Positions 2,775 through 31,691 of a stretch of 64,000 bases of DNA are shown here, piece after piece. Both the position numbers and the translations under genes were made by a program. Under the pieces are notes generated by a model that was given only the letters and a program-made list of their open reading frames with translations, made no database searches and was not told the origin of the DNA. The stretch's first letter is position 1; each line of letters starts with the position of its first letter. The stretch lies in the IMG/VR virus record IMGVR_UViG_3300034073_005389, positions 186,001 to 250,000 of that record. One strand, 5' to 3'.

Positions 2775-4121
2775 TTATTTTAGATATTTGTCCATGTTAA
2801 TTGGCTTGCCAGTCAAAAGATTTTTCTCTTTAACTAAACGCGCCACTGAAGTATCTATATCCTTCTCTGTCGGAGTTTTTCGATTATTCGACAAAGCTTC
2901 AAACATAGAAGAAATATAAATATCTTTTAAATAAGCATAAGATAACTCATATTTTTCTGTATATTTGGCAAGCTCTTTACATTTTTTAGTTGTAATTAAA
3001 TTGCCAAACCATTTTTTAAGATAAGCAAAAGCCATTTCTTGATCAGGTAATGGAATCTCCATTTTTCTATCAAATCTAGAAGGTCTATCTGTAATAGATG
3101 GTTTCAGCTTTTTAATTTCATTAGCAGTAGCAACAATCAATAACCCATTCTTAGCAGCAATGCCATCCATCAAATTTAAGAAAGAAGAAATATCATTCTT
3201 CTCAAGAATAGAATCTAAATCCTCAAAAAATAACAAAGAAGGACTTTGATCTTCTGCATAAGCAAAAGCCTCTCTAATTGCATTATCATCAGCCCCAGGA
3301 ATAATTGTTACTGGCTTAAAATTATATTGAGCCATAATAGTGCGGATAAGCGAACTCTTTCCACATCCAGGCTTTCCATATAACAATACGCCTCTCTTCC
3401 AAGGCATTTTGTTTTTTTGATAAAATTCTTTACTAGCCAAAAAATTCTCTACTAATTTTTTTAGTTCTAACTTAATATTAGAAGGTAGAAATAAATCATC
3501 CCAAGAATGATCTTTAGTATATGGAATATCATCACCATCTACTACCCTAATATGAAGATTAGAGCGATCCCTTCTTTGTACCCACTCATCAAATGAGTTC
3601 CTAAAAACCAAATAATTATTATAATTAGAGTGAGATAATAAATTAAAAAACCCTACTTCGTCTTCATTTTGATTTCCTTTGTGAAACAAAGCACAATGAA
3701 TAAACTCTAGTTCTTTTGTCTTAATTAAGAAGATTCCTTGAACAAAAAACTTTTCATAAAAATGATCGGTTTTCCAACTAATAATAGAATCTTTATATAA
3801 ACATTGAACAGAAATATCATTATCTTCACAATATTGAAGAAATTGTCCGTCAATAATAATTCTATTATGAATAAACTTTTCAATATTTGAATTATTTTTT
3901 AATACTGAAGAAAAATGATGCTGTACCCAATTCATTAAATCAATAAAATTACTATCAGGTCGAGGAGTATCTACAACAATAGATCGATCTGTAATTAAGC
4001 TCTTTAATCTTTCCTCGCATAAATGCTCTTGCATTTCAATATCTTCAGGAGTAAGATATGATGCATCTTGTAATTTATTATCCATTTTTTTATTTGCTCT
4101 TTCTATATTTTTATATAACAA
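2775..4121 (-). CDS. AAA+ ATPase (classical clade, single AAA domain)
   Basis: Walker A GKPGCGKS, Walker B LLFFED, ATAN sensor, DRPSRFD arginine-finger region. Confidence 0.9.
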   Translation of the reverse strand: MLYKNIERANKKMDNKLQDASYLTPEDIEMQEHLCEERLKSLITDRSIVVDTPRPDSNFIDLMNWVQHHFSSVLKNNSNIEKFIHNRIIIDGQFLQYCEDNDISVQCLYKDSIISWKTDHFYEKFFVQGIFLIKTKELEFIHCALFHKGNQNEDEVGFFNLLSHSNYNNYLVFRNSFDEWVQRRDRSNLHIRVVDGDDIPYTKDHSWDDLFLPSNIKLELKKLVENFLASKEFYQKNKMPWKRGVLLYGKPGCGKSSLIRTIMAQYNFKPVTIIPGADDNAIREAFAYAEDQSPSLLFFEDLDSILEKNDISSFLNLMDGIAAKNGLLIVATANEIKKLKPSITDRPSRFDRKMEIPLPDQEMAFAYLKKWFGNLITTKKCKELAKYTEKYELSYAYLKDIYISSMFEALSNNRKTPTEKDIDTSVARLVKEKNLLTGKPINMDKYLK

Positions 4122-11429: not shown

Positions 11430-12017
11430 TCAGATAATCTGGTCAATTAAACCATACTGCAAAGCTTGCTTAGCATCCATCCAAACATCTTGCTTACAAT
11501 CTTCTTTTAGTTTTTCTAGTGGATGACCTGTATGCTGAGCTAAAATTTTCATAATATTATCATTATTTTCTTTAATAAAATCATAATAATTTTTTGAATT
11601 TATAATATCTTGACCTGGTAAAGGAAATGCGAACTGAATACCATGAATCATGATTTTGGATGACTTCATAGCATATCTTTCTCCTTTTGCTCCGGCAGCC
11701 AAAATAACTGCACCGGCAGAATAAGCTTTACCGGCACATATTGTTTTAACTGGAGCTGAAATCATCTGCATTACATCATAAATATTAGCTAATCCAGCGG
11801 CATCTCCACCATTTGAATGTATATAAATGGTAATTGGTTCTTCATGATTTTCGTTATCATAATAAAGTAATAAGGCAGCTAGTTCGGCAGCACTTTGTTT
11901 AGTAACATCTTCAGATAAGAAGATCATTCTATCTTTAGTTAATCTAATATATGTTTCTGCATACCCGGCTAATGGATTTTTAGCGGCATCATGATCTTGT
12001 AAAGAATGTTTCTTCAT
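11430..12017 (-). CDS. clpP: Clp protease proteolytic subunit, triad intact
   Basis: IHSNGG, KAYSAG (Ser), KIMIHG (His), QDVWM (Asp), YGLIDQI. Confidence 0.92.
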   Translation of the reverse strand: MKKHSLQDHDAAKNPLAGYAETYIRLTKDRMIFLSEDVTKQSAAELAALLLYYDNENHEEPITIYIHSNGGDAAGLANIYDVMQMISAPVKTICAGKAYSAGAVILAAGAKGERYAMKSSKIMIHGIQFAFPLPGQDIINSKNYYDFIKENNDNIMKILAQHTGHPLEKLKEDCKQDVWMDAKQALQYGLIDQII

Positions 12018-12023
12018 AAACCC

Positions 12024-12608
12024 TCATTTAGAAATAGAAATAACTTTGTCAATCAAACCATACTTTACAGCTTGATTTGCGTTCATAAACACTGTTCTTT
12101 CAAAATCTTCCATTACTTGTTTAAGTGGTTTATTACAAGATTTAGAAAAAATCTCCATCATTCTTTTGTTATCTGACATAGATTGGTCTAATATTTTCTT
12201 AGCGTCTGTTAAATTAGAATTAGAATACCAATCGTGTACTAATTGTCCTGCTGAAATAACAGAATTTTTAGTAGCGAATCTCATTCCAGGAGTTCCGCCT
12301 GCCAGAATAATAGCAGCCTCATCCATGGCAGAGCCAATACAAACAGTTTCAATAGGCGATTCAATCATAGACATGATATCATAAATCATTAATGCGTTAC
12401 GAATATCACCTCCATCAGAATTAATAAATAATGTAATTTTTTTAGAACAATCCTCTGCATCTTTTAGCAGAAGAGTTGCAACAATATCTGTGGCTAAATT
12501 ATCAGTAATTTGATTACATAAAAATAAAATTCTATCATTGGCTAATTTTTGATATACGTCAATAGCAATATCACCATTTTCGGTGTTTTCAATAACTAAT
12601 GTATTCAA
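12024..12608 (-). CDS. catalytically inactive ClpP paralog (ClpR-like)
   Basis: ClpP fold (DRILFL, INSDGGD, YGLIDKVI) but Ser->Asp (SAMDEA), His->Gly (ISAGQ), Asp->Thr (ERTVFM). Confidence 0.88.
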   Translation of the reverse strand: MNTLVIENTENGDIAIDVYQKLANDRILFLCNQITDNLATDIVATLLLKDAEDCSKKITLFINSDGGDIRNALMIYDIMSMIESPIETVCIGSAMDEAAIILAGGTPGMRFATKNSVISAGQLVHDWYSNSNLTDAKKILDQSMSDNKRMMEIFSKSCNKPLKQVMEDFERTVFMNANQAVKYGLIDKVISISK

Positions 12609-13329: not shown

Positions 13330-13684
13330 TATCCTTACCTATATTATTTTTAATCATCTTGTCAATATCCAAGAAACTTATTAATTTCTTTTTGAATTTA
13401 TTGGCAACTTTAAAAAATATTTTTCTTTTACTTCTAGTAATAAGATGTTTGTTTCTAAATTTAATAAAATATTTTCTAGGAGCAGTTCTTTTTACTCCAA
13501 AAATTCCTAGATTAATAATCTTAAATTCTTTATCTTGCCTAATATCTTTAGATAATTCATCAAATAATATTGCTATTACACTAAAAACATGATGATGATT
13601 AATTTTTCTTTTAATTTTTTTATTTACATATTTATACAGCGCAACCCTATCAATTTTTTTGATCATACTTTTGTCCTTGACCAT
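13322..13684 (-). CDS. HU/IHF-like DNA-binding protein, divergent
   Basis: VIAILFDELSKDIRQDKEFKIINLGIFGVKRTAPR...FFKV..KFKKKL. Confidence 0.7.
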   Translation of the reverse strand: MVKDKSMIKKIDRVALYKYVNKKIKRKINHHHVFSVIAILFDELSKDIRQDKEFKIINLGIFGVKRTAPRKYFIKFRNKHLITRSKRKIFFKVANKFKKKLISFLDIDKMIKNNIGKDSE

Positions 13685-14004
13685 AAGATCCTGCCTTTAC
13701 CAAAAGAAGGATCTAAATATTTTTTATAATTTTCGTGAACAATTTTCCTATTTTCAAACCTAGAAACAATTCTTGTTTTAAAGAAAACTGAATTATTTAG
13801 CAACTCATCTGAGATGATATATTTTTTGTGTTTATTTATACATTTTTCACATAAACCATTAAATATATTATCAGAAGCAAATAAATTATGGGGAGAGTTT
13901 TTTTCTATATATTTGCCGCAAAAAGTAGAATACTTTTTATCAAAATTAAATTTTAAATTAACAATATGTGGAAAGTCATTATTATCTGTAATAAAGCAAA
14001 ACAT
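13663..14004 (-). CDS. hypothetical protein
   Basis: 113-aa ORF with H..TFCG..C..C. Confidence 0.5.
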   Translation of the reverse strand: MFCFITDNNDFPHIVNLKFNFDKKYSTFCGKYIEKNSPHNLFASDNIFNGLCEKCINKHKKYIISDELLNNSVFFKTRIVSRFENRKIVHENYKKYLDPSFGKGRILWSRTKV

Positions 14005-17603: not shown

Positions 17604-18464
17604 TTAAAATCTCCGAATTCCAATATTATTAAAATAATTTGCCATACATTGTGTTAAAGCTTCTTGTGTTGGCGTCATCAAGAAACCTGTTTGTCTTAAT
17701 TTTAAACAATCTAAAATACAGTTTGACCTAGTAGCTTGAGTTAGCTCCGCTAGCTCGTCTTCTGAGATAATTTCAAATTGATGAAGCGGTATGTATTTCT
17801 GATACTCGTTCATAATCTCTACAGCTGTTAATGGTTCTGGATTAGTTACATGAAATATTCCAGTATAATTATTACTTATCAAGTGATCAATACATCTGAT
17901 TAAATCAGAAATAAATGTAACAGAATTTTTAATATCAATTATTTTAGAATAAGTTTTTAACTTATTAATTAAATTTCTAGGATGATTTTTTTCAGAAATA
18001 GGCATCCTAATACGAAGCGTAGTGACGTTTGGCAAATCTCCAATTAACAAATCACAAGCATATTTTGTTTTTGAATAAAATGATTTTGGATTAGCAGCAT
18101 CTCTTTCTCTCCATCCATAATCGTAAGAAACTTGTTGATTTAATACTGATTTATCAACACGAGGAGATGGTCCATAAAAAATGCAACCAGAGTTAATTTG
18201 AACTAAATGTATAGATTGTTTATTACACTCTTGTGCCAAAAGTGTTGGAATGGTGACATTACTAATTAATGTGGCTTCTTGATTGTTCTCGCACCAGTCA
18301 ATATTAGGTCTTCCTGTTTTGCCAATACAAGAAACAATTACATCGGGCTTATAAATATCAATAAAATTTTGTACAGATCTTGTATTTGGCTCTAAATACA
18401 CATTTGGTTTATCATAAGATAAATGTTCTGCAATAAAACCATTACCTAATACACAAATTTTCAT
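17604..18464 (-). CDS. NDP-4-keto-6-deoxyglucose 3,5-epimerase/4-reductase (NRS/ER, RmlD-like; NDP-L-rhamnose synthesis)
   Basis: LGNGFIA, GKTGRPNIDWCE, SGCIF, SFYSKTK (YxxxK), LRIRMPI, KNSVT. Confidence 0.85.
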   Translation of the reverse strand: MKICVLGNGFIAEHLSYDKPNVYLEPNTRSVQNFIDIYKPDVIVSCIGKTGRPNIDWCENNQEATLISNVTIPTLLAQECNKQSIHLVQINSGCIFYGPSPRVDKSVLNQQVSYDYGWRERDAANPKSFYSKTKYACDLLIGDLPNVTTLRIRMPISEKNHPRNLINKLKTYSKIIDIKNSVTFISDLIRCIDHLISNNYTGIFHVTNPEPLTAVEIMNEYQKYIPLHQFEIISEDELAELTQATRSNCILDCLKLRQTGFLMTPTQEALTQCMANYFNNIGIRRF

Positions 18465-18724
18465 AATTGACTCTCAAACACATCATAAAATCGTTTGCCC
18501 ATATATTTCTCTGGTATTTCTAAATGTAAAATATGAAAATCGTTAATGGTCCAACCAATCATATTGTCATGAATAATAACTGTATAGTATTGTAGTTTTG
18601 TATTTTTTGCTACAATAATAAATTCATCTTCAAAATATTCATTTTTATTAAGCTTATCTTTTTTAAGATAAATTTTATTTTTATGTACTTTTAAAGTGAT
18701 TTTGTCTCCAACTTTATATTTCAT
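18461..18724 (-). CDS. hypothetical protein
   Basis: 87-aa ORF in operon. Confidence 0.5.
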   Translation of the reverse strand: MKYKVGDKITLKVHKNKIYLKKDKLNKNEYFEDEFIIVAKNTKLQYYTVIIHDNMIGWTINDFHILHLEIPEKYMGKRFYDVFESQL

Positions 18725-19439
18725 ATTTATTGTAATAATAATTGTTTACATAAGCAATAGATTGATGGGTCCCAGCATCATTCCACAACCCATCTATAAA
18801 AGTATAATCTAAATTTTGTTGAATATTATATAAATTAATAATATCGGTTATTTCATATTCATTTCTAGAACTAGGATTAATTTTTTTAAAAAAATCAAAA
18901 AATTGACAGTCAAACAAATAGCATCCAGTTATGGCATAATTATTATATTCTAAAGAAATTTTTTTTGGTTTTTCTTCAATTTTTATAATTTTATTATTTT
19001 GTATAGATGCCACTCCAAATCTATTTAATTCCGGGTGGTTATGCAAAACAATTTGAGATTTTGCATTAGAATTTTTCTTCCAAATAATAGGATTTTCAAA
19101 AATATTATCTCCTAATATAACCACAAAATTAGATTGTTGCGCTACATAAGACTGACATAATGAGATGGCTTGAGCGATCCCTTGCGGCTTGTGCTGATAA
19201 ACATAATTAAAATTTAGTTCATATTGACTGCCATCTTTTAAATGATCTACTACTTGTGAAAAGTGATTACCACCTAATACTACAGTAATGTTTTTGATAC
19301 CCATTGTTTTTAATGTTTTTATGGGATAATCAATAATAAACTGACCGTGCACTCCAAGCAAGTGCTTGTTTACAACATAAGTTAAAGGGTATAATCTAGA
19401 GCCAGTTCCACCGGCTAATAAAATTGCGTGGTCTATCAT
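18714..19439 (-). CDS. rmlA: glucose-1-phosphate thymidylyltransferase-like sugar nucleotidyltransferase
   Basis: AILLAGGTGSRLYPLT..NKHLL, Q.KPQGIAQAI, ILGDNIF, EEKP, RNEYEITD, WNDAGT. Confidence 0.85.
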   Translation of the reverse strand: MIDHAILLAGGTGSRLYPLTYVVNKHLLGVHGQFIIDYPIKTLKTMGIKNITVVLGGNHFSQVVDHLKDGSQYELNFNYVYQHKPQGIAQAISLCQSYVAQQSNFVVILGDNIFENPIIWKKNSNAKSQIVLHNHPELNRFGVASIQNNKIIKIEEKPKKISLEYNNYAITGCYLFDCQFFDFFKKINPSSRNEYEITDIINLYNIQQNLDYTFIDGLWNDAGTHQSIAYVNNYYYNKYEI

Positions 19440-19443: not shown

Positions 19444-19980
19444 TTATTTAGAAGGAGATACTGTCATCGACATAAATTTTCCATCTACATTAATAGGAGC
19501 ATCTGTTTGAATTAATGAACCTAATTCTTTAATTATCCAAAAAAGTTTGTCTTGCGCAACTTGTGGATGAGCTAATTCTCTGCCCCTAAATCTAACAGTA
19601 AATTTTACTTTATGACCATCTTTAATAAATTCTTTCGCTGATGCTAGCTTGTGATTTAAATCATTTAAATCAGTAGATGGTCTAAAAGTAATTTCTTTTA
19701 CTTCTTGAGTTTTTTGCTTTTTTCTGATTTCCGAAAGCCGCTTCTTCTCTTCATATTTAAATTTACCATAATTGTAAATTTTACATACTGGAGGAGATGA
19801 TTTAGGATTAATTTCGACTAAATCTAATCCTTGATCTTGAGCCAATTTAAGAGCATCGCGAGTAGGCATTACGCCTACTGATGCTCCATCTTGGTCAATT
19901 ACTCGAACTTGTGGTACTTTAATTTGATAATTAACTCGAACTCTAGATTGTGAATTTTGTTTTTGTGGCTGTGCTTCCAT
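19444..19980 (-). CDS. infC: translation initiation factor IF-3
   Basis: VRVIDQDG, GLDLVEIN, PPVCKI, KEITFRP, GHKVKFTVRFRGRE. Confidence 0.97.
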   Translation of the reverse strand: MEAQPQKQNSQSRVRVNYQIKVPQVRVIDQDGASVGVMPTRDALKLAQDQGLDLVEINPKSSPPVCKIYNYGKFKYEEKKRLSEIRKKQKTQEVKEITFRPSTDLNDLNHKLASAKEFIKDGHKVKFTVRFRGRELAHPQVAQDKLFWIIKELGSLIQTDAPINVDGKFMSMTVSPSK

Positions 19981-21035: not shown

Positions 21036-21731
21036 TTATAATGCAGCAATTAAATCTAAAATATCTTTACGAATCCCCTCTGAGGGATCTACTTTGTAAG
21101 TAATAGAATTATTACTGGCAAATGACTCAATGGCATTTTTGGTTCCTGGACCATAAAGCCCATCAATTTTTTTAGTATAAAGTTTTATTTTAGATAAATT
21201 AGTCTGAACTTGAATTAAAAGATCTTTAGTAAATGAGACGTATGAGACTAAGTTTTCTTTTTGATCCATGGGTCTCATAAAAAGCTCGCCTTCTGATATG
21301 CGACGATTTAACAATCCTTGAAGGACAGTTGAAACGCCATTTACTTTAGCTTTCGACCAATCTTTTAGGCGTTTAGGAACATCAGAAAACCGCTTCTCGT
21401 TAACTGCACGTTGAACTCCTGTATTACGTAATCCGCCTTCTCCAACATTAAAGACGAAACTAACAAGAGCATCAAATTGATTTTGATTTAACTCAATTGT
21501 TATTGATCGGTTAACTGCTCTTTCAAATCTTTCCACATCTTTACTAAGCAATTCCATAGCCATTTTTTCTGTAATTACATCTGGTATATTTTCACTAGGC
21601 AAAATTACATGACCTACTCCAATAGTAGGCTTACCAGCAGGACATATATACCTATTTAGTTTTAGTCCCTCCCAACGAGTAATTAAAGCCAATCCATTAG
21701 GTGATGTTTTCATGTTATTAATTGTCGTCAT
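21036..21731 (-). CDS. GH24 phage lysozyme (endolysin) with C-terminal peptidoglycan-binding domain
   Basis: LITRWEG (catalytic Glu), TIGVGH, NQNQFDALVSFVFNVG, GLLNRR..E; DGLYGPGTKNAI..F PG_binding_1-like. Confidence 0.92.
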   Translation of the reverse strand: MTTINNMKTSPNGLALITRWEGLKLNRYICPAGKPTIGVGHVILPSENIPDVITEKMAMELLSKDVERFERAVNRSITIELNQNQFDALVSFVFNVGEGGLRNTGVQRAVNEKRFSDVPKRLKDWSKAKVNGVSTVLQGLLNRRISEGELFMRPMDQKENLVSYVSFTKDLLIQVQTNLSKIKLYTKKIDGLYGPGTKNAIESFASNNSITYKVDPSEGIRKDILDLIAAL

Positions 21732-21748: not shown

Positions 21749-22102
21749 TGGTGGAGAATTGGGGAGTCGAACCCCATTCCGCAGAATATTATTATGTAAA
21801 CTCATTCACAAACTTAGCCAGTTTTACATCTCTAGCGATGTCAATAGATTTAGCTCTATTAAGCGATTCACTGTTGTTTTTATTATTAACCTCGTGACCT
21901 GATTAATAACTAACCTTGGTGGTTAAGTGTCTGTAGAATACTAAGGTTATCTCTTCTCAGACACCCAATCAGGCAGCTAGTGCCATTGGAGCAAATGCAT
22001 TATCGTTGGCATTTAAACGTCGATTGCTGGATTAACGGAATGGCAATCATTTCCTGTTTGCATTTACACAACTCTAAACCACGTCGAAACCAAGTATTCC
22101 CC
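21749..22102 (-). ncRNA. ssrA: tmRNA (transfer-messenger RNA), 354 nt
   Basis: Acceptor stem GGGGAAT/ATTCTCC-A-CCA with G3.U wobble, GGTTTCGAC D-region, T-arm TGGGG-TTCGACT-CCCCA, internal tag ORF, encoded CCA. Confidence 0.96.
21969..22010 (-). other. tmRNA tag reading frame ANDNAFAPMALAA*
   Basis: TTTAAAT then GCC AAC GAT AAT GCA TTT GCT CCA ATG GCA CTA GCT GCC TGA. Confidence 0.93.
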
Positions 22103-22181: not shown

Positions 22182-22209
22182 AGCTTATATTTTATAAATA
22201 GCATGTCAA
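22182..22209 (-). promoter_or_regulatory. sigma70-like promoter TTGACA-N16-TAAGCT (tmRNA precursor)
   Basis: ttgaca tgctatttataaaata taagct on the minus strand. Confidence 0.75.
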
Positions 22210-22364: not shown

Positions 22365-23147
22365 TTATGTGGCACGGAATAAATCATGTCCTAATCTAAA
22401 AATATTTAATAAAAAAGATTGTTCCTTAGTAAAGATAGGCAAATCATAATTTATAATCCATTTATTTTTCATATTTTCTCCTATTAATTTAGGAGATCGA
22501 TAACAAGCCGCACCTCTTCTAAAAACAGGATGATACTGATTAAAATCAATATTGCATTCTTGCGCTAACAATTCTATTTTTTCTTCAAAAGTTAATCCTT
22601 GAATCATCTCTTTAATAGAATTTTTATCATATTTTTTAATTAACTCATAAAAACAAGCCAATTGAATAGAGGTGTAAAAATTTTGTTGTTGCTTAAATAT
22701 AATAGTATTAACGGCTTCTGAAATAGAAGGTACATTAAAAACTCTAGAATGAAAGTGAGATTCGCCCAATAAATTTAAATCAGAGTTTTCAATATTCTTA
22801 TTGAATTCTAAAGTGGCTATAGAACTAGTGATAGAAGTTAATTTTTGAACTTTATTATCCAGCCAAGGACTAGTATCTGCAGATTGATCATTTCTAGCCA
22901 CAATTACAATTTCATCATTGTGATGATAAGCAAAAATAGCCCCCTCAATTTCAGAACATAATTTTAAGGCAGTGGTTAGCATATATTCTGAAAATTTTTC
23001 AGAATAAGGCTTATCTAATATAGATGTAGTCTTATTAAATGACCTACCATTAACTACTATAATTATTGGTAATTTATTTAATAGTTTCGCATCAGATTGG
23101 TCTTGATAAGAATCAATCCGATCTTTTAATTTAAGATTATTCATCAC
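22365..23147 (-). CDS. tRNA-His guanylyltransferase Thg1-like protein, first catalytic Asp replaced
   Basis: VVNGRSF (vs RxDGxxF), YHHNDEI, WLDNKVQK..S..SS.AT..FN, FHSRVF. Confidence 0.8.
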   Translation of the reverse strand: MMNNLKLKDRIDSYQDQSDAKLLNKLPIIIVVNGRSFNKTTSILDKPYSEKFSEYMLTTALKLCSEIEGAIFAYHHNDEIVIVARNDQSADTSPWLDNKVQKLTSITSSIATLEFNKNIENSDLNLLGESHFHSRVFNVPSISEAVNTIIFKQQQNFYTSIQLACFYELIKKYDKNSIKEMIQGLTFEEKIELLAQECNIDFNQYHPVFRRGAACYRSPKLIGENMKNKWIINYDLPIFTKEQSFLLNIFRLGHDLFRAT

Positions 23148-23799: not shown

Positions 23800-24393
23800 A
23801 TGATTACTTTTATTATACCTACAATAAATAGAAATACTTTAAATAGATCAATTGATTGTTTATTATCTCAATATAACCCAAATTGGAAAGCAATTGTAGC
23901 TTTTGATGGTTTACCTGCCTTACATTTTCCAGACCCTAGAATTACTTCAATTAGTGTGCCTAAAACAGGAAAATTGAACCATGCAGGTAATGTAAGAAAT
24001 ATTGCTATTTCCAAAGCTGATACAGACTGGGTAGCTTTTCTTGATGATGATGATACTATTTCTAATGATTATGTAGATAGGTTAGTAGAAGAAACAAAAG
24101 AAAATCCAGAAGCTAAATGTATTATATTTAGAATGAAAACCTCATTTGACCCCGTTGGTATTTTACCAGAACCAAATCATAATACATTTTATAAGTGCAG
24201 GGTAGGGATTAGTTTTGCAATAAAAAAAGAAATAAATATAAACTTTGAACCATCTCACATAGAAGACTTTATTATTTTAAATAAAATAAGAGAAAATGGT
24301 CATAAAATAATTATTTCTCCTTATGTTACTTACTTTGTAAGAGAAAATCCTTGCCCAATGCCAGCCTTTAAAAGAGTTAAAATTAACTATTAA
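23800..24393 (+). CDS. GT2-like glycosyltransferase (GT-A fold)
   Basis: FIIPTINR..L.RSIDCL..Q, GNVRNIAI, WVAFLDDDD, EDF. Confidence 0.85.
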   Translation: MITFIIPTINRNTLNRSIDCLLSQYNPNWKAIVAFDGLPALHFPDPRITSISVPKTGKLNHAGNVRNIAISKADTDWVAFLDDDDTISNDYVDRLVEETKENPEAKCIIFRMKTSFDPVGILPEPNHNTFYKCRVGISFAIKKEININFEPSHIEDFIILNKIRENGHKIIISPYVTYFVRENPCPMPAFKRVKINY

Positions 24394-25331
24394 TAATTTT
24401 CTCTATACCAATCAATAGTTTTAATTAAGCCTTGTGTTAAAGAAGTTTCTGCAGTAAAATTTAGTAATTGTTTTGCCCTAGAAACATCCAATAAGCGTTT
24501 TGGCTGACCATCAGATACTTCTCCAGTAAAGATAATTTGACCTTTAAAATCAGTCAATTCTGCTATTAGATAAGCTAAATCTTTAATAGAGATATCAACA
24601 CCAGTTCCTATATTAATAGGAAGTTCTGTGTCTAATTTTTGCTCTACAGCTTGTAATATGGCTTTAGCACAATCTTCTGCATAAAGAAACTCTCTAGTAG
24701 CATTTCCAGTGCCCCAACAAAATACTTGAGGTCTATTTTCTTTTACTGCTGTAACAAACTTATTAATTAAAGCAGGTATTACATGGCTATTTTCTAAATC
24801 AAAATGATCATGAATCCCGTACATATTCACTGGTATTAAATGAGCCCCTTTTGTTTGATATTGCTGCTTCATAGATTGAAACAATAACATCATTGTTTTT
24901 TTAGCGAGACCATATCCAGAATTCGTTTCTTCTGGAAAGCCTTCCCATAAACTATCTTCTTTAAATGGCGCGGGGCAGTATTTAGGATATCCACAAACAG
25001 AACCTAAAGTATAAACATATTCTACTTTATGTTCTAGACACTGTTCTAAAACATTAGAGTTCATTTGTAGATTAAATAAGGTTAAATCAGCGGGTTGTCT
25101 TTGATTTAATCCTATTCCTCCGCATTTAGCAGCAGCATGAATTACTATGTTTGGCTTAATTAAATTAAATAATTGCTCACATTCGCTTTGCTTTTCTAAG
25201 CGATAAAATTTTTTATTATAAGTTTGTCCAACAAAATACAAATCATATTTGTATTGGTAAGGCATAAATACTTTTTGAAGATTTTTGCCTAAAAATCCAG
25301 TGCCGCCAGTAATTAAAACTTTTTCTTTCAT
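24390..25331 (-). CDS. fcl: GDP-L-fucose synthase
   Basis: ITGGTGFLG, AAKCGGIG, EETNSGYGLAK, PVNMYG, SHVIPALI, WGTG..TREFLY. Confidence 0.95.
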   Translation of the reverse strand: MKEKVLITGGTGFLGKNLQKVFMPYQYKYDLYFVGQTYNKKFYRLEKQSECEQLFNLIKPNIVIHAAAKCGGIGLNQRQPADLTLFNLQMNSNVLEQCLEHKVEYVYTLGSVCGYPKYCPAPFKEDSLWEGFPEETNSGYGLAKKTMMLLFQSMKQQYQTKGAHLIPVNMYGIHDHFDLENSHVIPALINKFVTAVKENRPQVFCWGTGNATREFLYAEDCAKAILQAVEQKLDTELPINIGTGVDISIKDLAYLIAELTDFKGQIIFTGEVSDGQPKRLLDVSRAKQLLNFTAETSLTQGLIKTIDWYRENY

Positions 25332-25337
25332 AATATT

Positions 25338-26327
25338 TCAAGTATTGTCTTTAATAAGTTTTTCTTGTTTCGCTAGCTTTAAATCATGCGCGATCATTTC
25401 ATCTACAAGCATTTCAAAAGTATACTCTGGTTTCCACCCTAATTTATTTCTTATTTTAGAAGAATCTCCTTGTAAGGCATCTACTTCTGTTGGGCGCAAA
25501 TACTTAGGATCAAATTTAACATATTGTTGATAATCTAAATCTAATTTATTAAATACTAGTTCTGCAAATTCTTTTACAGAATGCATTTCGCCAATAGACA
25601 CAACATAATCATCTGGAGTATCAGATTCCAAAATTTTAATCATTGCTTTTGCATAATCTTTTGCATGACCCCAATCTCTTTTTGCTTCAAGGTTTCCTAA
25701 ATATAATTCATTTTGTAAACCTAATTTAATTCTAGTAGCTGCTCTAGTAATTTTTCGAGTAACAAATGTTTCAGCTCTACGCTCGCTCTCATGGTTAAAA
25801 CAAATTGTATTGCAAGCAAATAAATTATAAGCTTCTCTGTAATTGATGGTAGAATAATATCCTGTTGCCTTTGCTACTGCGTAAGGAGATCGTGGATGAA
25901 AAGGAGTATTCTCATTTTGTGGCGGAGGCGTAGAGCCATAAAGCTCACTTGAAGAGCTTTGTAAAAATCTAGTGTTAGGACTATATTTTCTAATAGCTTC
26001 TAGGCACCTTATAACTCCAGTACCGGTTATGTCTACTGTGTACTCTGGAATATCAAAAGAAACTCTAACATGAGATTGTGCTGCCATGTTAAAGAACATA
26101 TCTGGATTTATGTCAGACACCAAGTTGGCTATGGAAGAATAGTCTGACAAATCACCATATATTAATTTAAGATTAGGATGATCGAACAAATGATCTATTC
26201 TATCTGTATTAAAAGAAGATGATCTACGTTTTAAACCATAAACTTTATAATCTTTTTCTAAAAGAATATCAGCTAAATACGAACCAGTTTGTCCTGTGAT
26301 ACCTGTAATAATTGCTGTTTTTGACAT
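25338..26327 (-). CDS. gmd: GDP-mannose 4,6-dehydratase
   Basis: ITGITGQTGSYL, AAQSHVRVSF, PRSPYAVAK, FNHESERR, LGNLEAKRDWGHA, RPTEVD. Confidence 0.97.
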   Translation of the reverse strand: MSKTAIITGITGQTGSYLADILLEKDYKVYGLKRRSSSFNTDRIDHLFDHPNLKLIYGDLSDYSSIANLVSDINPDMFFNMAAQSHVRVSFDIPEYTVDITGTGVIRCLEAIRKYSPNTRFLQSSSSELYGSTPPPQNENTPFHPRSPYAVAKATGYYSTINYREAYNLFACNTICFNHESERRAETFVTRKITRAATRIKLGLQNELYLGNLEAKRDWGHAKDYAKAMIKILESDTPDDYVVSIGEMHSVKEFAELVFNKLDLDYQQYVKFDPKYLRPTEVDALQGDSSKIRNKLGWKPEYTFEMLVDEMIAHDLKLAKQEKLIKDNT

Positions 26328-26344
26328 TGATTATTCCTATAAAT

Positions 26345-27235
26345 TTATATATAATTTTTAATTAGTTTAATAGCATTTTCTCGAGAAATATTTTGTTCTG
26401 GCTGAATAATTTTAGCTTTATATTTTATATTTTTTTTACCCCATTCACCAAGAAAAAAACTATTCGAATCAGACATAGGTAGTCTTGAAAAGGTAATCAT
26501 TTTTTTATTAGGATTATTTAAATTTTCTTGAGTCATACAAAATGTAAAAGGTCCTGAAGCCCTACCAATGATCATATCACAGTTTAAACTTAAATATGAT
26601 ATCTCATTTAAATCAGATCCAGATAACTTATTGACTATATCAGAAGTAAAAAAAATATTTAAAAATTTATTTTTTTCAAAATTAATTTTTTTTGTTAAAA
26701 TAAAATTTTTATTTTTATATAAAGAGGCTAGTTCAATAACAATTGAATCTAAGTTAATATTATAAGATTGATTTGATAAAGGTTGACCATTACAAAACAA
26801 AATGCTATTTTCAATATTTTTGATATTTTTAATATTAAAAACGTTATAATTTATAGATGGAAACATCTCTAATGGGTTTTTAAAAATATTTTCAATTTTT
26901 ATTGAAAAATGATTAAATATATCTTTAAATAAAAAATACAAACAATCAAGAGTGATTTTATATTTTTTTAAATATTTACTTTTGTTAGAGCCATACCAAG
27001 TATTTATGTAAATTTTATTGTCAATTTTAGTTATAAAATCATGTGATTTTATTTTTTTATAAATTTCAGAATCATATTGAATATATGACATGTCTTTCAA
27101 TATTTCCTCACCATTTTTGTGAGAATAAATATATTTGTATTTTTTTATTCCAATATTTTCACATAATTTTTTAACAAAATTTCTAGAAATATGGATATCT
27201 CCATTTCTGCAAGGATTATAAAAAATAATGTCCAT
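26345..27235 (-). CDS. GT9-like glycosyltransferase, family A copy 1
   Basis: NGDIHISR and DLNEISYLS..CD.IIGRASGP resemble the GT9 GD and L.E...L....D..IG.DSGP motifs. Confidence 0.55.
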   Translation of the reverse strand: MDIIFYNPCRNGDIHISRNFVKKLCENIGIKKYKYIYSHKNGEEILKDMSYIQYDSEIYKKIKSHDFITKIDNKIYINTWYGSNKSKYLKKYKITLDCLYFLFKDIFNHFSIKIENIFKNPLEMFPSINYNVFNIKNIKNIENSILFCNGQPLSNQSYNINLDSIVIELASLYKNKNFILTKKINFEKNKFLNIFFTSDIVNKLSGSDLNEISYLSLNCDMIIGRASGPFTFCMTQENLNNPNKKMITFSRLPMSDSNSFFLGEWGKKNIKYKAKIIQPEQNISRENAIKLIKNYI

Positions 27236-27249
27236 ATTTTTTATGTAAT

Positions 27250-27501
27250 TTATTTGCCATACATTTTAGTAGATCCTTGCTTATATAATTTTTGCAATTC
27301 TCCGGTACTACAAATATGGTTAATTTTTTCATCAATCTCTTGAATTAAGTCATTTCTTTGTTGATTGGCAATATTTGTTAATTTTGTGGCATCTGCGATT
27401 TGTTTATCAGAAGCGCTTTTATCCCTCTTTATATCTTCTGCCATCCAAATTCTAATATTTACTACTGTTAGTTTATCAATTAAATTGCCTATTGTATCCA
27501 T
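27250..27501 (-). CDS. small DUF4254-like helical protein, copy 1
   Basis: TIGNLIDKL...W..ED..R...NQQRNDLIQEID...KMY. Confidence 0.55.
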   Translation of the reverse strand: MDTIGNLIDKLTVVNIRIWMAEDIKRDKSASDKQIADATKLTNIANQQRNDLIQEIDEKINHICSTGELQKLYKQGSTKMYGK

Positions 27502-27508
27502 AATTACC

Positions 27509-28297
27509 TCAAATTTTGCATTTTAATATATCCTCTTGAGTATCATTTAACAATTTATTATAATTATAATTGTTTTTTACATCAGCCATAATCAATTTTT
27601 GATTATTTAAAATCTCAGTAGAATTTTCTTGAACAAAATAAAAAAAATCTAAATTATTTATATTGTACAAATCTTGTATAAATTCTCTTACGTTAAAAAG
27701 TCTACCAGCTCCTACAATAGAATCGCTTTTTGCCTTTATACTTTCTTCTACAATAAATTTAGTATGAACCATATCTCGATAAAAATTTAAATTATTTACT
27801 TGTATTTTCTTTTTATTTAAAATTGAATCAAATATTTTACCAAATAAAAAATATTGAGATCTATGAACTGAATTAAAATAAAATGGGTGAATAAATAAAA
27901 TTTTATTGTATCTAATGTCAAACTTTTGAAGCTCTTTTATTTTATTAAATAATAATAATTTTGATAAGATATATTCATTATTTAATGGATAAAAATTTGG
28001 AAGAGTGCTTAAAGATATTTTTCCAGATAAGTTATTCCACAACTCACATGTAGTATAACAAATTATCTTATTACAATTTTCAATTAAAGAATTAATTATT
28101 TTTAATGTATACAAATAATTAGGACTAATATAGTCAATATTATTTTCGTAAATTCTTTGCTCTGCAAAAGTAATATAAACTGAATTATATTCAGTATTTT
28201 TTAATAACTTAAAATCAATATCTCTAGAAGATATTTTAACATAGTCTTCAGGAAAATATTTTGATAATTGAGATGTATTACCAATTACTAAATTCAT
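27509..28297 (-). CDS. divergent NAD-dependent epimerase/dehydratase (extended SDR)
   Basis: Degenerate Gly motif VIGNTSQLS, TTCE, YILSK (YxxxK), YRDMVH, VGAG. Confidence 0.6.
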   Translation of the reverse strand: MNLVIGNTSQLSKYFPEDYVKISSRDIDFKLLKNTEYNSVYITFAEQRIYENNIDYISPNYLYTLKIINSLIENCNKIICYTTCELWNNLSGKISLSTLPNFYPLNNEYILSKLLLFNKIKELQKFDIRYNKILFIHPFYFNSVHRSQYFLFGKIFDSILNKKKIQVNNLNFYRDMVHTKFIVEESIKAKSDSIVGAGRLFNVREFIQDLYNINNLDFFYFVQENSTEILNNQKLIMADVKNNYNYNKLLNDTQEDILKCKI

Positions 28298-28899
28298 TTT
28301 TTTATTTTAAAAATATAATTATATTTTATTTTATTTACTAACTCATAACCAATAGACTTCATATATGTCTCATATTCTGGTAAATATAAATAATTTTCTA
28401 ACAAAATTATTTCAGGCTGATATTTTTTAGTATCAAATCCTTTCATTACTTCCAATTCCCATCCCTCTGTATCAATTGATACAAAATCAACTTTTTCTAC
28501 TTTTATTTTATCTAATAAAGTATTTAATTTTAAAATTTGAACTTTTATTTCTTTAATTTTATGTGATCCTTTTAAAGGATATTTAAGATCAATTGCAGAA
28601 TAACTAATACCATTTGCATGTTGCGGCCATCCAGTCTCTACAATTTTAAATGAAGATAATTTTTCTTCATTAGCGCAAGCAAATTGGTAAATTTCATTTC
28701 CGGCTTTCTTATGGCTTTCAACAAATTTAGGATTAGGATCGATGCAAATACATCTCCAACCATGATCTCTAAAATGCTTTGACATGCTAAAAAAATCAAC
28801 TGGACCAGCACCAACTTCAACCATAACTTTTTTTTCTAAAAAATTAGGAAAAAAATTTTCTCTGATATATTTATCTGTTTCTAATTCGGCGTAATACAT
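28294..28899 (-). CDS. FkbM family methyltransferase
   Basis: VEVGAG, IDPNP, DFVSIDTEGWELEVMKG. Confidence 0.88.
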   Translation of the reverse strand: MYYAELETDKYIRENFFPNFLEKKVMVEVGAGPVDFFSMSKHFRDHGWRCICIDPNPKFVESHKKAGNEIYQFACANEEKLSSFKIVETGWPQHANGISYSAIDLKYPLKGSHKIKEIKVQILKLNTLLDKIKVEKVDFVSIDTEGWELEVMKGFDTKKYQPEIILLENYLYLPEYETYMKSIGYELVNKIKYNYIFKIKK

Positions 28900-28905
28900 A
28901 AATTC

Positions 28906-30123
28906 CTAAAAACTTATAATTTCAAAATTGGGGCAAGGAACAATAAACTTACCACCATTGGCTAGATAATCTATTTCTCTATGATAAAATTCATTTATAA
29001 AATGCCAGGGTAGTACTAATAAATAGTCTGGCTTTTTTTTACGCATCTCATCTTCAGAATATATAGGAATATTAGTTCCAACAGTTTTTAAACCAAATTT
29101 ATAAACACTTCTTTCAGCAATTCCATCTATTAAAGTATGATCTAATCCAAAATACTGTAACAAAGTATTGCCTTTAGTAGATGCGCCATATCCCCAAATT
29201 ACTTTTCCCTTTTCTTTTTCTTTTTTTATAAAATTTACAGTTTTTTCTTTTAATTTATTAATTTTAATAAAAAAATTTTTCCAAGTATCAATAGAATTTA
29301 AATTTAATTTTTCTTCGTGTAAAAGTAAAGATTTGATTCTAAAATCACAAACATCTCTATAAGGTTGAGTGGCAAAAGTTTTTTCGTTTCCAACATCTTT
29401 CATTACATAAACTCTAAATGATCCGCCATTTGTATCGTTTAAATGACAATCAACAATTTTAAATTTATTTTTTTCTAAAAGATTTTTTAAATTAAATAAA
29501 GAATAATAATAAATATGTTCATGGCAAATATTATCAAACGCTAGTTGAGATAACATTAATGGAGTGTAACTTAATTGCAGCACCCATAAACCATCATCAT
29601 CTAAAACATCATATATATCTTTGACAAAAGAGTTGGGATCTTCTAAATCGTAAAACATAGCAATTGATGTAATAATTTTGGGTTTTAGATTACCGTATTT
29701 GCTATTTTTAAAATTAAAAGAAGTAAAATAATTTTGAATTATTACATCAGCATGTTTTGATGACTCTTTTACGAAAGATTCATCGGCAGGGTCTATGCCA
29801 ATTTTTATTAAATAATCTGGTAAAAAACTTAACAAAGTACCATCATTGCATGCAATATCTAACCAAACATCATTTTCTTTTAATTTTTTTACTTTTAAAA
29901 TAGATTCAGTAATGTCTTTTAATTCTTCTTTCATTGAATTATTTGTACCAGACCTATACCAATATTTGCCATACATTGTTTCTAGCGGTGCTGATTTTTC
30001 TAACCTAACCAACCCATCCTCAAGCATAACAAGTTTCATTTCAACTTTGTCACCTCTAGGCAGCTCATCATTTTTAATGAAATCAGAAACATAAAGGCTT
30101 CCCAAACTAAATAAATCTTTCAT
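28906..30123 (-). CDS. NDP-hexose C-methyltransferase (TcaB9/EryBIII-like)
   Basis: YWYRSG, LDIACNDGTLL, SIAMFYD, CHEHIYYYS, GGSFRV, GYGASTKGNTLL, PDYLLVLPWHF. Confidence 0.88.
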   Translation of the reverse strand: MKDLFSLGSLYVSDFIKNDELPRGDKVEMKLVMLEDGLVRLEKSAPLETMYGKYWYRSGTNNSMKEELKDITESILKVKKLKENDVWLDIACNDGTLLSFLPDYLIKIGIDPADESFVKESSKHADVIIQNYFTSFNFKNSKYGNLKPKIITSIAMFYDLEDPNSFVKDIYDVLDDDGLWVLQLSYTPLMLSQLAFDNICHEHIYYYSLFNLKNLLEKNKFKIVDCHLNDTNGGSFRVYVMKDVGNEKTFATQPYRDVCDFRIKSLLLHEEKLNLNSIDTWKNFFIKINKLKEKTVNFIKKEKEKGKVIWGYGASTKGNTLLQYFGLDHTLIDGIAERSVYKFGLKTVGTNIPIYSEDEMRKKKPDYLLVLPWHFINEFYHREIDYLANGGKFIVPCPNFEIISF

Positions 30124-30125
30124 TA

Positions 30126-30758
30126 TTAACCTCTAATATAAAAATCATTTACTTCTACTCTTTTATCTTTTTTCCAGCCCTTTTCTTTCAAAAAAGATTC
30201 AATAAAAGGCTCATTAAAATTATTCTCTATTACCATAAGTTTTGTATTATATTTATTTACATCAAAAGATTTTAGTACATCTAATTCATTTCCTTCAGTA
30301 TCTATAGAGATAAAATCTATTACTTTATGATTAAAGTGATTTGTTATGCACCAATCTAATCTTCTTGATTTTACTTTAATATCTTTTTTTTGTGGCTGTA
30401 ATCCTAATTTTTCATGACTAAGAATCAGTCTGTCATCAATTTCTAATCCGCTAATAGAAGATTGGTTTGCGGTTTTCATGGTAACAACAGTGAAATTAAC
30501 ATCATCTATATTTTTACTAGAAACAGCATAGTTAATAGCATTTTTTCTGTTCTTTTTTAGAGAGATAAAGTAATGTGGATTTGGCTCAATGCATAGCGCA
30601 TTCCACCCATTTTTTTCAAAATGCAATGTATTAGAAATAAAAATTCCGTCTACAGCACCAACTTCAATACAATTACCTGTTTTTTGATTGGGAAAATAAT
30701 TTTTTATTATTTTGTCAATTGGAGGATTAAATTGACCATGAAATTTAGTATATATCAT
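30126..30758 (-). CDS. FkbM family methyltransferase
   Basis: IEVGAVDG..SNT..FE..GW..LCIEPNP, DFISIDTEGNE. Confidence 0.88.
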   Translation of the reverse strand: MIYTKFHGQFNPPIDKIIKNYFPNQKTGNCIEVGAVDGIFISNTLHFEKNGWNALCIEPNPHYFISLKKNRKNAINYAVSSKNIDDVNFTVVTMKTANQSSISGLEIDDRLILSHEKLGLQPQKKDIKVKSRRLDWCITNHFNHKVIDFISIDTEGNELDVLKSFDVNKYNTKLMVIENNFNEPFIESFLKEKGWKKDKRVEVNDFYIRG

Positions 30759-30763
30759 TTTAC

Positions 30764-31672
30764 CTACATATTATTTTTAATTATGTTAAAAACATTTTCT
30801 AAGTTTGTTTCGTTTGATTGTATAATTTTTGCCTTATATTTAATATTTTTTTTACCCCAATCACCAAGATAAAAATCTCCTACACCGGATTTAGACAAAT
30901 TTGAAAAAGTAATCATTTTCTTATTAGGATTGTCAAAATTTTCTCTTACCATAGAAAAAGAAAATGGTCCAGAGGCTCTGCCAATAATTGTATCACATTT
31001 TAAACTTAAATAGGAAATTTCATTTAAATCTGAACCTGATTTTTTATTTATTATTTCTGAAGTAAAAAAAATATTTTTATTTTTTTTACTTAAATCATTA
31101 GTAACAATAAAATTAAAATTTGGATATTGAGAAGATAATTTTAAAATAATATTAGTAAAATCAAAATTTGATGCTTGATTTGACATAGCCAATCCATTAC
31201 ATATTAAAATATTTTTTTTATTTTTAAATTGATCATAAAATTGATCAATTTTACTAATTTCAAAAAAATTATAATTAATTTGTGGCAAAATGTCTAAAGG
31301 ATTAGCAAAAACATTTTCTATTTTTAGATTAAATTTTAAAAAAATATCTTTAAAAAGAAAATATAGGCAATCAAAAGTAATTCCATGTTTTTTTATATAC
31401 TTACTATTATCAGCAGAAAACCAAGTATTAATATAATTGTCATCATTATATTTTACAAATAAACTAGTATGAGGGACTTTTTTTCTAATTTCTTTTCCAT
31501 CATTTAATTTTAAATGACTTATATTGGGTAAATCTGCTAATAGGCAAGAATCATTTTTATGAAAATAAAAAAAATTATTTGAAGAAATTAATTTAGACAT
31601 AGCAGAAATAAAATTTCTAGAAATATGAATATCTCCATTTCTGCAATAATTATAAAATATAATTTTACTCAT
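30764..31672 (-). CDS. GT9-like glycosyltransferase, family A copy 2
   Basis: Same NGDIHISR and DLNEISYLSLKCD.IIGRASGP blocks as 26345. Confidence 0.55.
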   Translation of the reverse strand: MSKIIFYNYCRNGDIHISRNFISAMSKLISSNNFFYFHKNDSCLLADLPNISHLKLNDGKEIRKKVPHTSLFVKYNDDNYINTWFSADNSKYIKKHGITFDCLYFLFKDIFLKFNLKIENVFANPLDILPQINYNFFEISKIDQFYDQFKNKKNILICNGLAMSNQASNFDFTNIILKLSSQYPNFNFIVTNDLSKKNKNIFFTSEIINKKSGSDLNEISYLSLKCDTIIGRASGPFSFSMVRENFDNPNKKMITFSNLSKSGVGDFYLGDWGKKNIKYKAKIIQSNETNLENVFNIIKNNM

Positions 31673-31691
31673 TTATTATAATGGATTAATA

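What the first reader, a model, noticed from the sequence alone, without database searches (positions are those of the whole stretch)
21749..22102. Complete phage tmRNA whose LAA-ending tag matches a co-encoded Clp system
Seen: all tRNA-like determinants, tag ANDNAFAPMALAA, its own promoter, and ClpP plus ClpR-like genes 10 kb away; no smpB in the window. Known: the terminal LAA is the ClpX degron, and phage tmRNAs are uncommon but described. Inference: the phage supplies both ends of trans-translation (rescue and disposal), perhaps to outlast host toxins that cleave tmRNA or mRNA during abortive infection.
Basis: partly seen in the sequence, partly recalled or inferred. Interest (0 to 1): 0.7.

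Follow-up and report, generated by a model that had tools for sequence, protein, structure and literature searches.

The report
Huge-phage tmRNA gene, real but ordinary
A 361-kb freshwater phage carries a genuine, evolutionarily maintained ribosome-rescue RNA (tmRNA) as part of a small translation gene module, which is a known habit of very large phages; its proposed partnership with the phage's own Clp protease genes is not shown.

Summary
Window 21749-22102 (minus strand) is a complete one-piece tmRNA: ARAGORN calls it, and Rfam RF00023 scores 114 bits against a cut-off of 47. It has a G3:U pair, a canonical T-arm, an encoded CCA and the tag ANDNAFAPMALAA. It lies inside a 361-kb huge phage that has terminase, portal, rIIA and 11 tRNAs and no integrase.

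About 20 related huge-phage contigs (130-480 kb) carry the same RNA in the same place: Thg1-like enzyme, tRNA-Thr genes, tmRNA, then IF3. 49 of 73 predicted base pairs show compensatory changes, and the tag codons change synonymously. The RNA is therefore selected both as a structure and as a message.

An active ClpP and a triad-less ClpR-like paralogue sit 9-10 kb away and are also clade-wide. No SmpB, SspB or ClpX/ClpA-type unfoldase is encoded. ClpP does not read the degron. Relatives with the same Clp pair have tags ending QAA, MAA, EAA or QVA. The "LAA matches the phage Clp system" reading is therefore unsupported.

No canonical promoter was found. tmRNAs, ClpP, Thg1 and IF3 in huge phages are already published. 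Verdict: a new member of a known kind, of moderate-to-low interest.

The parts
21749..22102 (-). One-piece tmRNA (ssrA) gene, 354 nt
   Evidence: ARAGORN. Rfam RF00023 at 114.4 bits, full model. Homologues in about 20 huge-phage contigs, with 49 of 73 predicted pairs showing compensatory changes.
21969..22010 (-). Tag reading frame: resume codon GCC, 13 codons ANDNAFAPMALAA, stop TGA
   Evidence: ARAGORN coding part 93-134. In 16 homologues the first five residues ANDNA are invariant with synonymous changes at codons 1, 3 and 4. The last two Ala use GCT, GCA or GCC.
22022..22054 (-). Pseudoknot PK1 (stems GGAA/UUCC and GAUUGC/GCAAUC)
   Evidence: Read from the sequence. Both stems can form, with different sequences, in 15-16 of 16 homologues.
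21749..21776 (-). 3' half of the tRNA-like domain: T-arm (loop UUCGACU), acceptor 3' strand, discriminator A, encoded CCA
   Evidence: G3:U is invariant in 16 of 16. The acceptor and T stems covary.
22204..22209 (-). TTGACA hexamer about 100 nt upstream of the tmRNA; not a verified promoter
   Evidence: Sequence. The promoter scan finds nothing there. The region is not conserved in L004.
22365..23147 (-). Thg1-like protein (3'-5' tRNA nucleotidyltransferase family), the conserved upstream neighbour of the tmRNA
   Evidence: Pfam Thg1 and Thg1C. PHROG tRNA-His guanylyltransferase. Adjacent to the tmRNA in 14 related loci.
21036..21731 (-). Endolysin (lysozyme plus peptidoglycan-binding domain) that starts 17 nt after the tmRNA CCA; an insertion specific to this genome
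   Evidence: Pfam. Absent from this position in all relatives.
19444..19980 (-). Translation initiation factor IF-3, the conserved downstream member of the module
   Evidence: Pfam IF3_N and IF3_C. NCBIfam infC equivalog, 197 bits against a cut-off of 60. Downstream of the tmRNA in relatives.
11430..12017 (-). ClpP-family protease subunit with an intact Ser-His-Asp triad
   Evidence: Pfam CLP_protease 172.7 bits. Alignment to solved ClpP. Triad conserved in relatives.
12024..12608 (-). ClpP paralogue lacking all three catalytic residues (ClpR-like)
   Evidence: Pfam 160.8 bits. Alignment to solved ClpP. The same substitutions occur across the clade.
2775..4121 (-). Cdc48/VAT/YjoB-like single-ring AAA+ ATPase; conserved in relatives, with no shown link to ClpP
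   Evidence: No IGF-type loop motif in the ATPase module.

Best explanation
This is a functional tmRNA gene belonging to a lytic-type huge phage (361 kb, from freshwater and subsurface samples). It is one member of a conserved translation-support module: Thg1-like tRNA 5'-end repair enzyme, tRNA-Thr genes in relatives, tmRNA, then IF3. Inferred mechanism: the RNA is cut out of a longer transcript by host RNase P and 3' processing enzymes. Host AlaRS charges it with alanine through G3:U and A73. Host SmpB and EF-Tu carry it into ribosomes stalled on broken or stop-less mRNAs. It then adds (A)ANDNAFAPMALAA, which releases the ribosome and marks the fragment for host AAA+ proteases. The benefit to the phage is extra rescue capacity when mRNA is being degraded, or cut by host nucleases, during infection. 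The nearby ClpP/ClpR-like pair is a second clade-wide trait. It may digest tagged fragments only if a host unfoldase docks on it; that link is conjecture. Shown here: identity, completeness, phage location, conservation, and structural and coding selection. Inferred: processing, charging, SmpB use, tagging and the benefit to the phage.
For: Identity. Phage context: virus record rated 97% complete by CheckV; large terminase subunit and portal; rIIA and DNA ligase; 11 tRNAs; no integrase; a relative of 452 kb with terminal repeats rated 100% complete. Conservation: the Thg1-like to tmRNA order holds in L004-L010. 18 full-length homologues were found by family profile, and five more in a set chosen by ClpR alone. 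Structural selection: 49 of 73 pairs carry compensatory changes, G3:U is invariant, and both PK1 stems covary. Coding selection on the tag. Translation module: IF3, synteny, and a CCA-adding-like enzyme elsewhere in the genome. Dependence on the host: no SmpB, no SspB, no ClpX-type ATPase. Weak sign of expression: three metatranscriptome runs hold 170-215-nt contigs about 93% identical to tmRNA positions 21893-22060, and nothing matching the flanking genes. Precedent: huge-phage tmRNAs (PMC7162821), phage G with tmRNA, ClpP and ClpX (PMC12484599), and Bradyrhizobium phages (PMC12656738).
Against: There is no direct evidence of transcription, processing, charging or tagging for this phage. The RNA-run contigs are from relatives, and the runs were picked because they hold tmRNA words. 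The host is unknown, so compatibility with host SmpB and AlaRS is assumed. One near-complete relative (G005) does without the tmRNA, so it is dispensable in at least one lineage. Several relatives have non-canonical T-loops that ARAGORN rejects and Rfam scores at only 51-65 bits.
Confidence: 0.72

Rival explanations
1. One reading: the phage tmRNA and the phage ClpP/ClpR-like pair form one phage-owned rescue-and-disposal axis, kept to survive host toxins that cut mRNA or tmRNA.
For: Both features are clade-wide and lie 9-14 kb apart in every complete relative but one. All but one of the 21 tags end in Ala-Ala, a known ClpX/ClpA determinant. The Clp proteins score far better against cellular ClpP than against ClpP-related head proteases (164 and 172 bits against 64 and 43). 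They lie about 50 kb from the terminase and portal genes.
Against: No unfoldase of the ClpX/ClpA type and no SspB in six records. The antepenultimate tag residue drifts (L, Q, M, E) while the Clp pair stays the same. G005 keeps the Clp pair without a tmRNA. Shared inheritance within one clade is not independent evidence of coupling. The published view of jumbo-phage ClpP is that it is deployed against host proteins (PMC7824862).
Confidence: 0.15
2. The RNA acts as a competitor or reprogrammer rather than a helper. It outcompetes host tmRNA for SmpB, so that stalled-ribosome products receive the phage's tag, or host trans-translation-dependent responses are blunted.
For: No SmpB is encoded, so the RNA must share the host's pool. 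The tag ANDNAFAP was found in only one tmRNA among representative genomes of 185,579 species, so it is not a copy of a common host tag.
Against: The tag keeps the standard grammar: ANDxx-aromatic at the start and Ala-Ala at the end. It therefore looks like a normal degradation tag. Nothing distinguishes competition from simple supplementation in sequence data.
Confidence: 0.08
3. The gene is a passenger or integration relic: a host ssrA copy captured recently, or the attachment-site copy of a temperate element that integrates into ssrA.
For: IMG/VR labels the record 'provirus'. ssrA is a classic integration site (PMC3146451, PMC12656738).
Against: The gene is full length, not a 3' fragment, and sits in the middle of the record. 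There is no tyrosine integrase in the genome. It holds the same syntenic position in about 20 diverged phage contigs with compensatory evolution. No similar bacterial or phage sequence was found by BLAST.
Confidence: 0.03

Closest known systems
tmRNAs of huge phages and megaphages (Al-Shayeb et al. 2020, PMC7162821; Bacillus phage G, PMC12484599; Sinorhizobium phage AP-J-162, PMC11242549)
   Same: A one-piece tmRNA in a phage genome over 300 kb, alongside tRNAs, translation factors and Clp components.
   Different: Some of those phages also encode SmpB (Al-Shayeb 2020) or ClpX (phage G, AP-J-162). This clade encodes neither. Its Clp module is an active plus an inactive ClpP pair. Its tag is of the ANDNAF...AA type, unlike phage G's AKLNITNNELQVA.
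Bacterial SsrA/SmpB trans-translation with ClpXP/SspB degradation (E. coli, Caulobacter)
   Same: Same RNA architecture (G3:U acceptor, T-arm, PK1, tag frame). The tag has an AANDxx-aromatic start and an Ala-Ala end, which in proteobacteria are the SspB and ClpX/ClpA determinants (textbook knowledge, not tested here).
   Different: SmpB, SspB and ClpX are not encoded with it, and the gene is viral. The alpha- and some beta-proteobacterial tmRNAs with the most similar tags are two-piece (permuted); this one is one-piece.
ClpP/ClpR mixed protease cores of cyanobacteria and plastids; ClpP1P2 of mycobacteria
   Same: Tandem paralogues, one of which lacks the Ser-His-Asp triad. This suggests a mixed ring or stack.
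   Different: Orthology to ClpR was not tested. Both proteins fall below NCBIfam clpP equivalog cut-offs. No partner ATPase is encoded. Hetero-oligomer formation is not shown (one search gave no verdict).
Jumbo-phage RNA-repair and ribosome-rescue toolkits (Iyer et al. 2021, PMC7824862)
   Same: Thg1, CCA-adding enzyme, IF3, tRNAs and ClpP are all listed there as sporadic jumbo-phage genes.
   Different: Here Thg1-like, tRNA-Thr, tmRNA and IF3 form one conserved neighbourhood across a whole clade. That review, as searched here (no occurrence of 'tmRNA'), does not describe such an arrangement.

Membership tests
tmRNA (Rfam RF00023, one-piece) | Covariance-model score above the curated gathering threshold over the full model | tested here: met
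   114.4 bits against 47, model positions 1-374.
tmRNA (Rfam RF00023, one-piece) | tRNA-Ala-like domain: acceptor stem with G3:U70, discriminator A, CCA end, T-arm | tested here: met
   Read from the sequence. G3:U is invariant in 16 of 16 homologues, and the acceptor and T stems covary.
tmRNA (Rfam RF00023, one-piece) | Internal tag frame that starts at an Ala resume codon, ends at a stop and is under coding selection | tested here: met
   ARAGORN tag. Changes in the conserved tag codons are synonymous only.
tmRNA (Rfam RF00023, one-piece) | Pseudoknot PK1 upstream of the resume codon | tested here: met
   Both stems are present, and they form with different sequences in 15-16 of 16 homologues.
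tmRNA (Rfam RF00023, one-piece) | Alanylation, SmpB binding and tagging of non-stop products | not testable with these tools
   No SmpB is encoded and the host is unknown. This needs bench work.
ClpP (peptidase S14) proteolytic subunit | Pfam CLP_protease domain over the cut-off | tested here: met
   172.7 and 160.8 bits against 20.2.
ClpP (peptidase S14) proteolytic subunit | Ser-His-Asp catalytic triad | tested here: met
   Met for 11430-12017. Not met for 12024-12608, which has Asp, Gly/Ala and Thr at those positions and is therefore filed only as ClpR-like.
ClpP (peptidase S14) proteolytic subunit | Equivalence to bacterial ClpP (NCBIfam TIGR00493 equivalog cut-off) | tested here: not met
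   146 and 148 bits against a cut-off of 308.6. These are diverged family members, not equivalogs.
Phage-encoded complete SsrA-ClpXP pathway (rescue plus disposal) | Own degron reader: ClpX/ClpA-type unfoldase (AAA_2) or SspB adaptor | tested here: not met
   No AAA_2 hit above the cut-off in G000. Only weak hits in 5 relatives; a single one, a generic 370-aa AAA ATPase in G004, just reaches the cut-off. No SspB.
ClpP-related phage head-maturation protease | Match to the head-maturation model over its cut-off; location in the head module | tested here: not met
   NF045542 scores 64 and 43 bits against 120. The genes lie about 50 kb from the terminase and portal genes. PHROG head-protease hits are weaker than the Pfam ClpP hits.
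ssrA-targeting integrative element (att site copy) | Integrase, and a partial 3' ssrA copy at an element end | tested here: not met
   No integrase. The gene is full length and internal.

The most novel reading that the evidence does not exclude
A clade of freshwater huge phages has kept together, over long divergence, a tmRNA and a ClpP/dead-ClpP pair, while encoding no SmpB and no unfoldase. The phage protease core may capture the host's ClpX/ClpA and, with the phage tmRNA, form a hybrid phage-host quality-control line. That line would turn stalled host translation products into amino acids for the phage, or blunt mRNA-cleaving abortive-infection toxins.
Probability: 0.12. Interest if true: 0.6.

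Novelty: new member of a known kind. Interest (0 to 1): 0.33.

Why it matters
The finding adds a well-supported case, with covariation and coding selection rather than a bare ARAGORN call, that huge phages keep their own ribosome-rescue RNA while relying on the host's SmpB. It also defines a conserved Thg1-like / tRNA-Thr / tmRNA / IF3 neighbourhood and a clade-wide active plus inactive ClpP pair that could be tested biochemically. It does not change what is known about trans-translation. The attractive idea of a phage-owned rescue-and-disposal system remains a hypothesis.

Tried and rejected
1. Exact search for the tag-coding 42-mer in IMG/VR: no hit. BLAST of the tmRNA against GenBank phages: only a 28-nt T-arm match to a tRNA-like gene of Pectobacterium phage My1.
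2. Host identification failed. BLAST of the tmRNA against five bacterial genomes gave nothing useful. The single genome-contig scan for ANDNAFAP found 34 places, of which only one is a tmRNA: an alpha-type permuted one in a MAG labelled Kaiserbacteria.
3. Complex prediction on ClpP plus ClpR-like: no verdict (score 0.01). This is not evidence either way.
4. A T4 gp21-type prohead protease and a gp23 capsid were sought by Pfam. Nothing rang, but the controls did not ring either, so these searches are uninformative.
5. The 487-aa ORF beside ClpP (9939-11402) was checked as a possible unfoldase. It has no family hit and a low-complexity sequence, so it was rejected.
6. The Cdc48-like AAA+ was checked for an IGF-type docking motif; none is in the ATPase module. 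The relatives' copies were not captured by my script, so conservation of that absence was not assessed.
7. The PurZ (Z-genome) idea for 43318-44457 was rejected. The protein scores as ordinary adenylosuccinate synthase (393 bits) and far below the PurZ cut-off.
8. Remnants of tRNA genes were sought between the Thg1-like gene and the tmRNA with a permissive Rfam scan; none were found.
9. Reads were laid from RNA runs. Only contigs from relatives matched, covering the tag-to-PK2 region, and no 5' or 3' ends could be read.

Full report
**Observation.** ARAGORN finds one tmRNA in the window, at 21749-22102 on the minus strand, with tag ANDNAFAPMALAA. Rfam's tmRNA model RF00023 matches the same coordinates end to end at 114.4 bits (cut-off 47, E 6e-44). 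The sequence shows:
- a 7-bp acceptor stem, GGGGAAU paired with AUUCUCC, with the G3:U pair that AlaRS reads;
- discriminator A and an encoded CCA;
- a T-arm with the canonical UUCGACU loop;
- an H-type pseudoknot PK1 (GGAA/UUCC and GAUUGC/GCAAUC) just before the resume codon GCC at tmRNA position 93;
- a 13-codon frame closed by UGA.

The strand is minus.

**Promoter.** The sigma-70 scan reports nothing on the minus strand upstream of the gene. There is a TTGACA hexamer about 100 nt upstream (22204-22209), but no -10 hexamer at 16-18 nt. The 262-nt spacer does not align with that of the closest relative. In relatives, one to four tRNA-Thr genes sit between the upstream gene and the tmRNA, in one case only 35 nt away. 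Processing from a tRNA-type polycistron is therefore at least as likely as a dedicated promoter.

**Where it lies.** The window is bases 186001-250000 of a 361,490-bp IMG/VR virus record that CheckV rates 97% complete.
- The genome has a large terminase subunit, a portal and a CCA-adding-like enzyme at 141-150 kb.
- The window holds rIIA, an NAD-dependent ligase and an endolysin.
- There are 11 tRNAs at 300-343 kb and no tyrosine integrase.
- A relative of 451,956 bp has direct terminal repeats and is rated 100% complete.
- The DNA is found in subsurface, freshwater and lake metagenomes from several studies.

This is a huge phage. The "provirus" label is probably a classifier artefact, and the tmRNA is not an attachment-site relic.

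**Conservation.** Searching IMG/VR with the upstream Thg1-like protein gave eight loci, most on 350-450-kb contigs. Seven of them have a tmRNA just downstream.
- A scan for the tag-start motif followed by a family profile found 18 full-length one-piece homologues on contigs of 130-480 kb.
- A set chosen only by the ClpR-like protein added five more.
- In a 16-sequence alignment (mean identity 70%), RNAalifold predicts 73 pairs, and 49 have compensatory double changes. G1-C, G2-C and G3:U never vary.
- The two PK1 stems form with quite different sequences in 15-16 of the 16.
- The tag begins ANDNA in all 16, with only synonymous variation at codons 1, 3 and 4. The last two alanines use GCT, GCA or GCC.

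The RNA is therefore under selection both as a fold and as a message. That is the best computational evidence available that it works as a tmRNA.

**Neighbourhood.** The conserved gene order is: unknown ORF, Thg1-like enzyme, tRNA-Thr genes in relatives, tmRNA, one or two small ORFs, then IF3. The endolysin that starts 17 nt after the tmRNA's CCA is peculiar to this genome. The tmRNA is thus part of a translation-support module, in line with what has been reported for huge and jumbo phages (PMC7162821, PMC7824862).

**The Clp link.** Two tandem 195-aa ClpP-family genes lie at 11430-12608.
- The downstream one keeps Ser, His and Asp. The upstream one has Asp, Gly/Ala and Thr at those positions.
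- The same pattern holds in every relative examined. "ClpP plus ClpR-like" is therefore accurate as a description.
- Both score much higher against cellular ClpP models than against ClpP-related head proteases, though below the clpP equivalog cut-off.
- The pair occurs in all five Thg1-selected relatives and in 10 of 11 further tmRNA-bearing contigs. Conversely, tmRNAs turn up in ClpR-selected records, 10-14 kb away.

That is common descent within one clade. It is not independent evidence of coupling. Three facts argue against a specific "LAA to phage Clp" match.
1. From established ClpXP/ClpAP biochemistry, the tag is recognised by ClpX, ClpA and SspB, not by ClpP. The phage and its relatives encode no SmpB, no SspB and no ClpX/ClpA-type AAA_2 ATPase. 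The only strong AAA+ nearby is a Cdc48/VAT/YjoB-like protein with no docking-loop motif.
2. Relatives with the same Clp pair have tags ending QAA, MAA, EAA and QVA. What is conserved is ANDNA at the start and, nearly always, Ala-Ala at the end.
3. One 92%-complete relative keeps the Clp pair and IF3 but has no tmRNA. A suppressor tRNA(CUA) sits in that slot.

**Mechanism.** The RNA most likely supplements host trans-translation. It would be processed by host RNases, charged by host AlaRS, delivered by host SmpB and EF-Tu, and would tag and release stalled ribosomes during infection. This is inferred from family membership and selection, not observed. Three metatranscriptome runs hold short contigs about 93% identical to the tag-to-PK2 part of the gene and nothing from the flanking genes. 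That hints that a relative's tmRNA is transcribed. The evidence is weak, because the runs were chosen for holding tmRNA words.

**Host.** The host could not be identified. The tag grammar resembles proteobacterial, especially alpha-type, tags. The only cellular tmRNA with ANDNAFAP among representative genomes is a permuted alpha-type one. This remains a lead only.

**Novelty.** Phage tmRNAs are documented in huge phages together with SmpB (PMC7162821), in phage G together with ClpP and ClpX (PMC12484599), in a Sinorhizobium jumbo phage (PMC11242549) and in Bradyrhizobium phages (PMC12656738). ClpP, Thg1 and IF3 in jumbo phages are reviewed in PMC7824862. This finding is a new, well-supported member of a known kind. 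The modestly new points are the clade-wide Thg1-like/tRNA/tmRNA/IF3 neighbourhood and the conserved active plus inactive ClpP pair without any encoded unfoldase.

Noticed in passing
window 22365-23147 (-); L004-L011, L127, L146, L159, L169, L173, L185, L192: A Thg1-like 3'-5' nucleotidyltransferase (tRNA 5'-end repair family) is the constant upstream neighbour of the tmRNA, and of tRNA-Thr genes in relatives. Whether it acts on the phage tRNAs or on the tmRNA is unknown.
   Followed up: partly
L004:5185-5547, L009:5158-5511, L161, L159, L197, L146, L185, L274, L275: Many relatives replace the canonical T-loop UUCGA with GGCAGU-type loops. At the same time the D-loop changes from GG-U to AG-A. 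This looks like a tertiary-contact covariation. ARAGORN misses these genes and Rfam scores them at only 51-65 bits.
   Followed up: partly
L006:8388-8461, L011:5673-5747; G002, G004, G005, G016: Some relatives carry a suppressor tRNA with anticodon CUA and an RF1/RF2-type release-factor gene, which this genome lacks. This hints at amber-codon reassignment in part of the clade. In L011 the suppressor tRNA occupies the tmRNA's position.
   Followed up: no
L161:8375-8731 and 8929-9200; L171:13098-13369 and 13567-13923: Two contigs carry two tmRNA copies about 200 nt apart, one full length and one truncated at about profile position 275.
   Followed up: no
L120, L122, L123, L128, L182, L191, L196 and others: Dozens of other IMG/VR contigs carry permuted (two-piece, alpha- or beta-type) tmRNAs with ANDNA... 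tags, several beside arrays of 10-11 tRNAs. Either phage-borne two-piece tmRNAs are common, or these are host fragments at ssrA integration sites.
   Followed up: partly
L212:3302-3687 (-): A MAG labelled Candidatus Kaiserbacteria holds an alphaproteobacterial-type permuted tmRNA (RF01849, 121.8 bits) with tag ANDNAFAPQALAA, one residue away from the phage tag. This could be mis-binning or a real candidate-phyla-radiation (CPR) feature.
   Followed up: no
window 21036-21731 (-): The endolysin gene begins 17 nt after the tmRNA and is absent from this position in all relatives. A 69%-identical copy lies on an unrelated 24.8-kb viral contig (L012) with no tmRNA nearby.
   Followed up: partly
window 2775-4121 (-): A 448-aa Cdc48/VAT/YjoB-like AAA+ ATPase is conserved in all relatives, 8-9 kb from the Clp pair. 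It also gives a weak hit to the anti-phage ATPase IteA model. Its function is unknown.
   Followed up: partly
window 17604-19439 and 23800-37983: Large nucleotide-sugar and glycan gene sets flank the tmRNA module: GDP-mannose dehydratase, epimerases, nucleotidyl transferase, glycosyltransferases, C-methyltransferase, aminotransferase and an 820-aa double methyltransferase.
   Followed up: no
G000:C1:300817-343475: The phage tRNA set is skewed to A/U-ending codon readers: four tRNA-Leu(UAA), two tRNA-Arg(UCU) and one tRNA-Ile(UAU). This fits a 30% GC phage in a host of higher GC content.
   Followed up: no
window 46828-49639 (-): A DUF2201 metallopeptidase/VWA-like protein sits next to an ATPase (phrog_1297). 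The 553-aa ORF also hits an HNH-endonuclease PHROG, so it may contain an inserted element.
   Followed up: no
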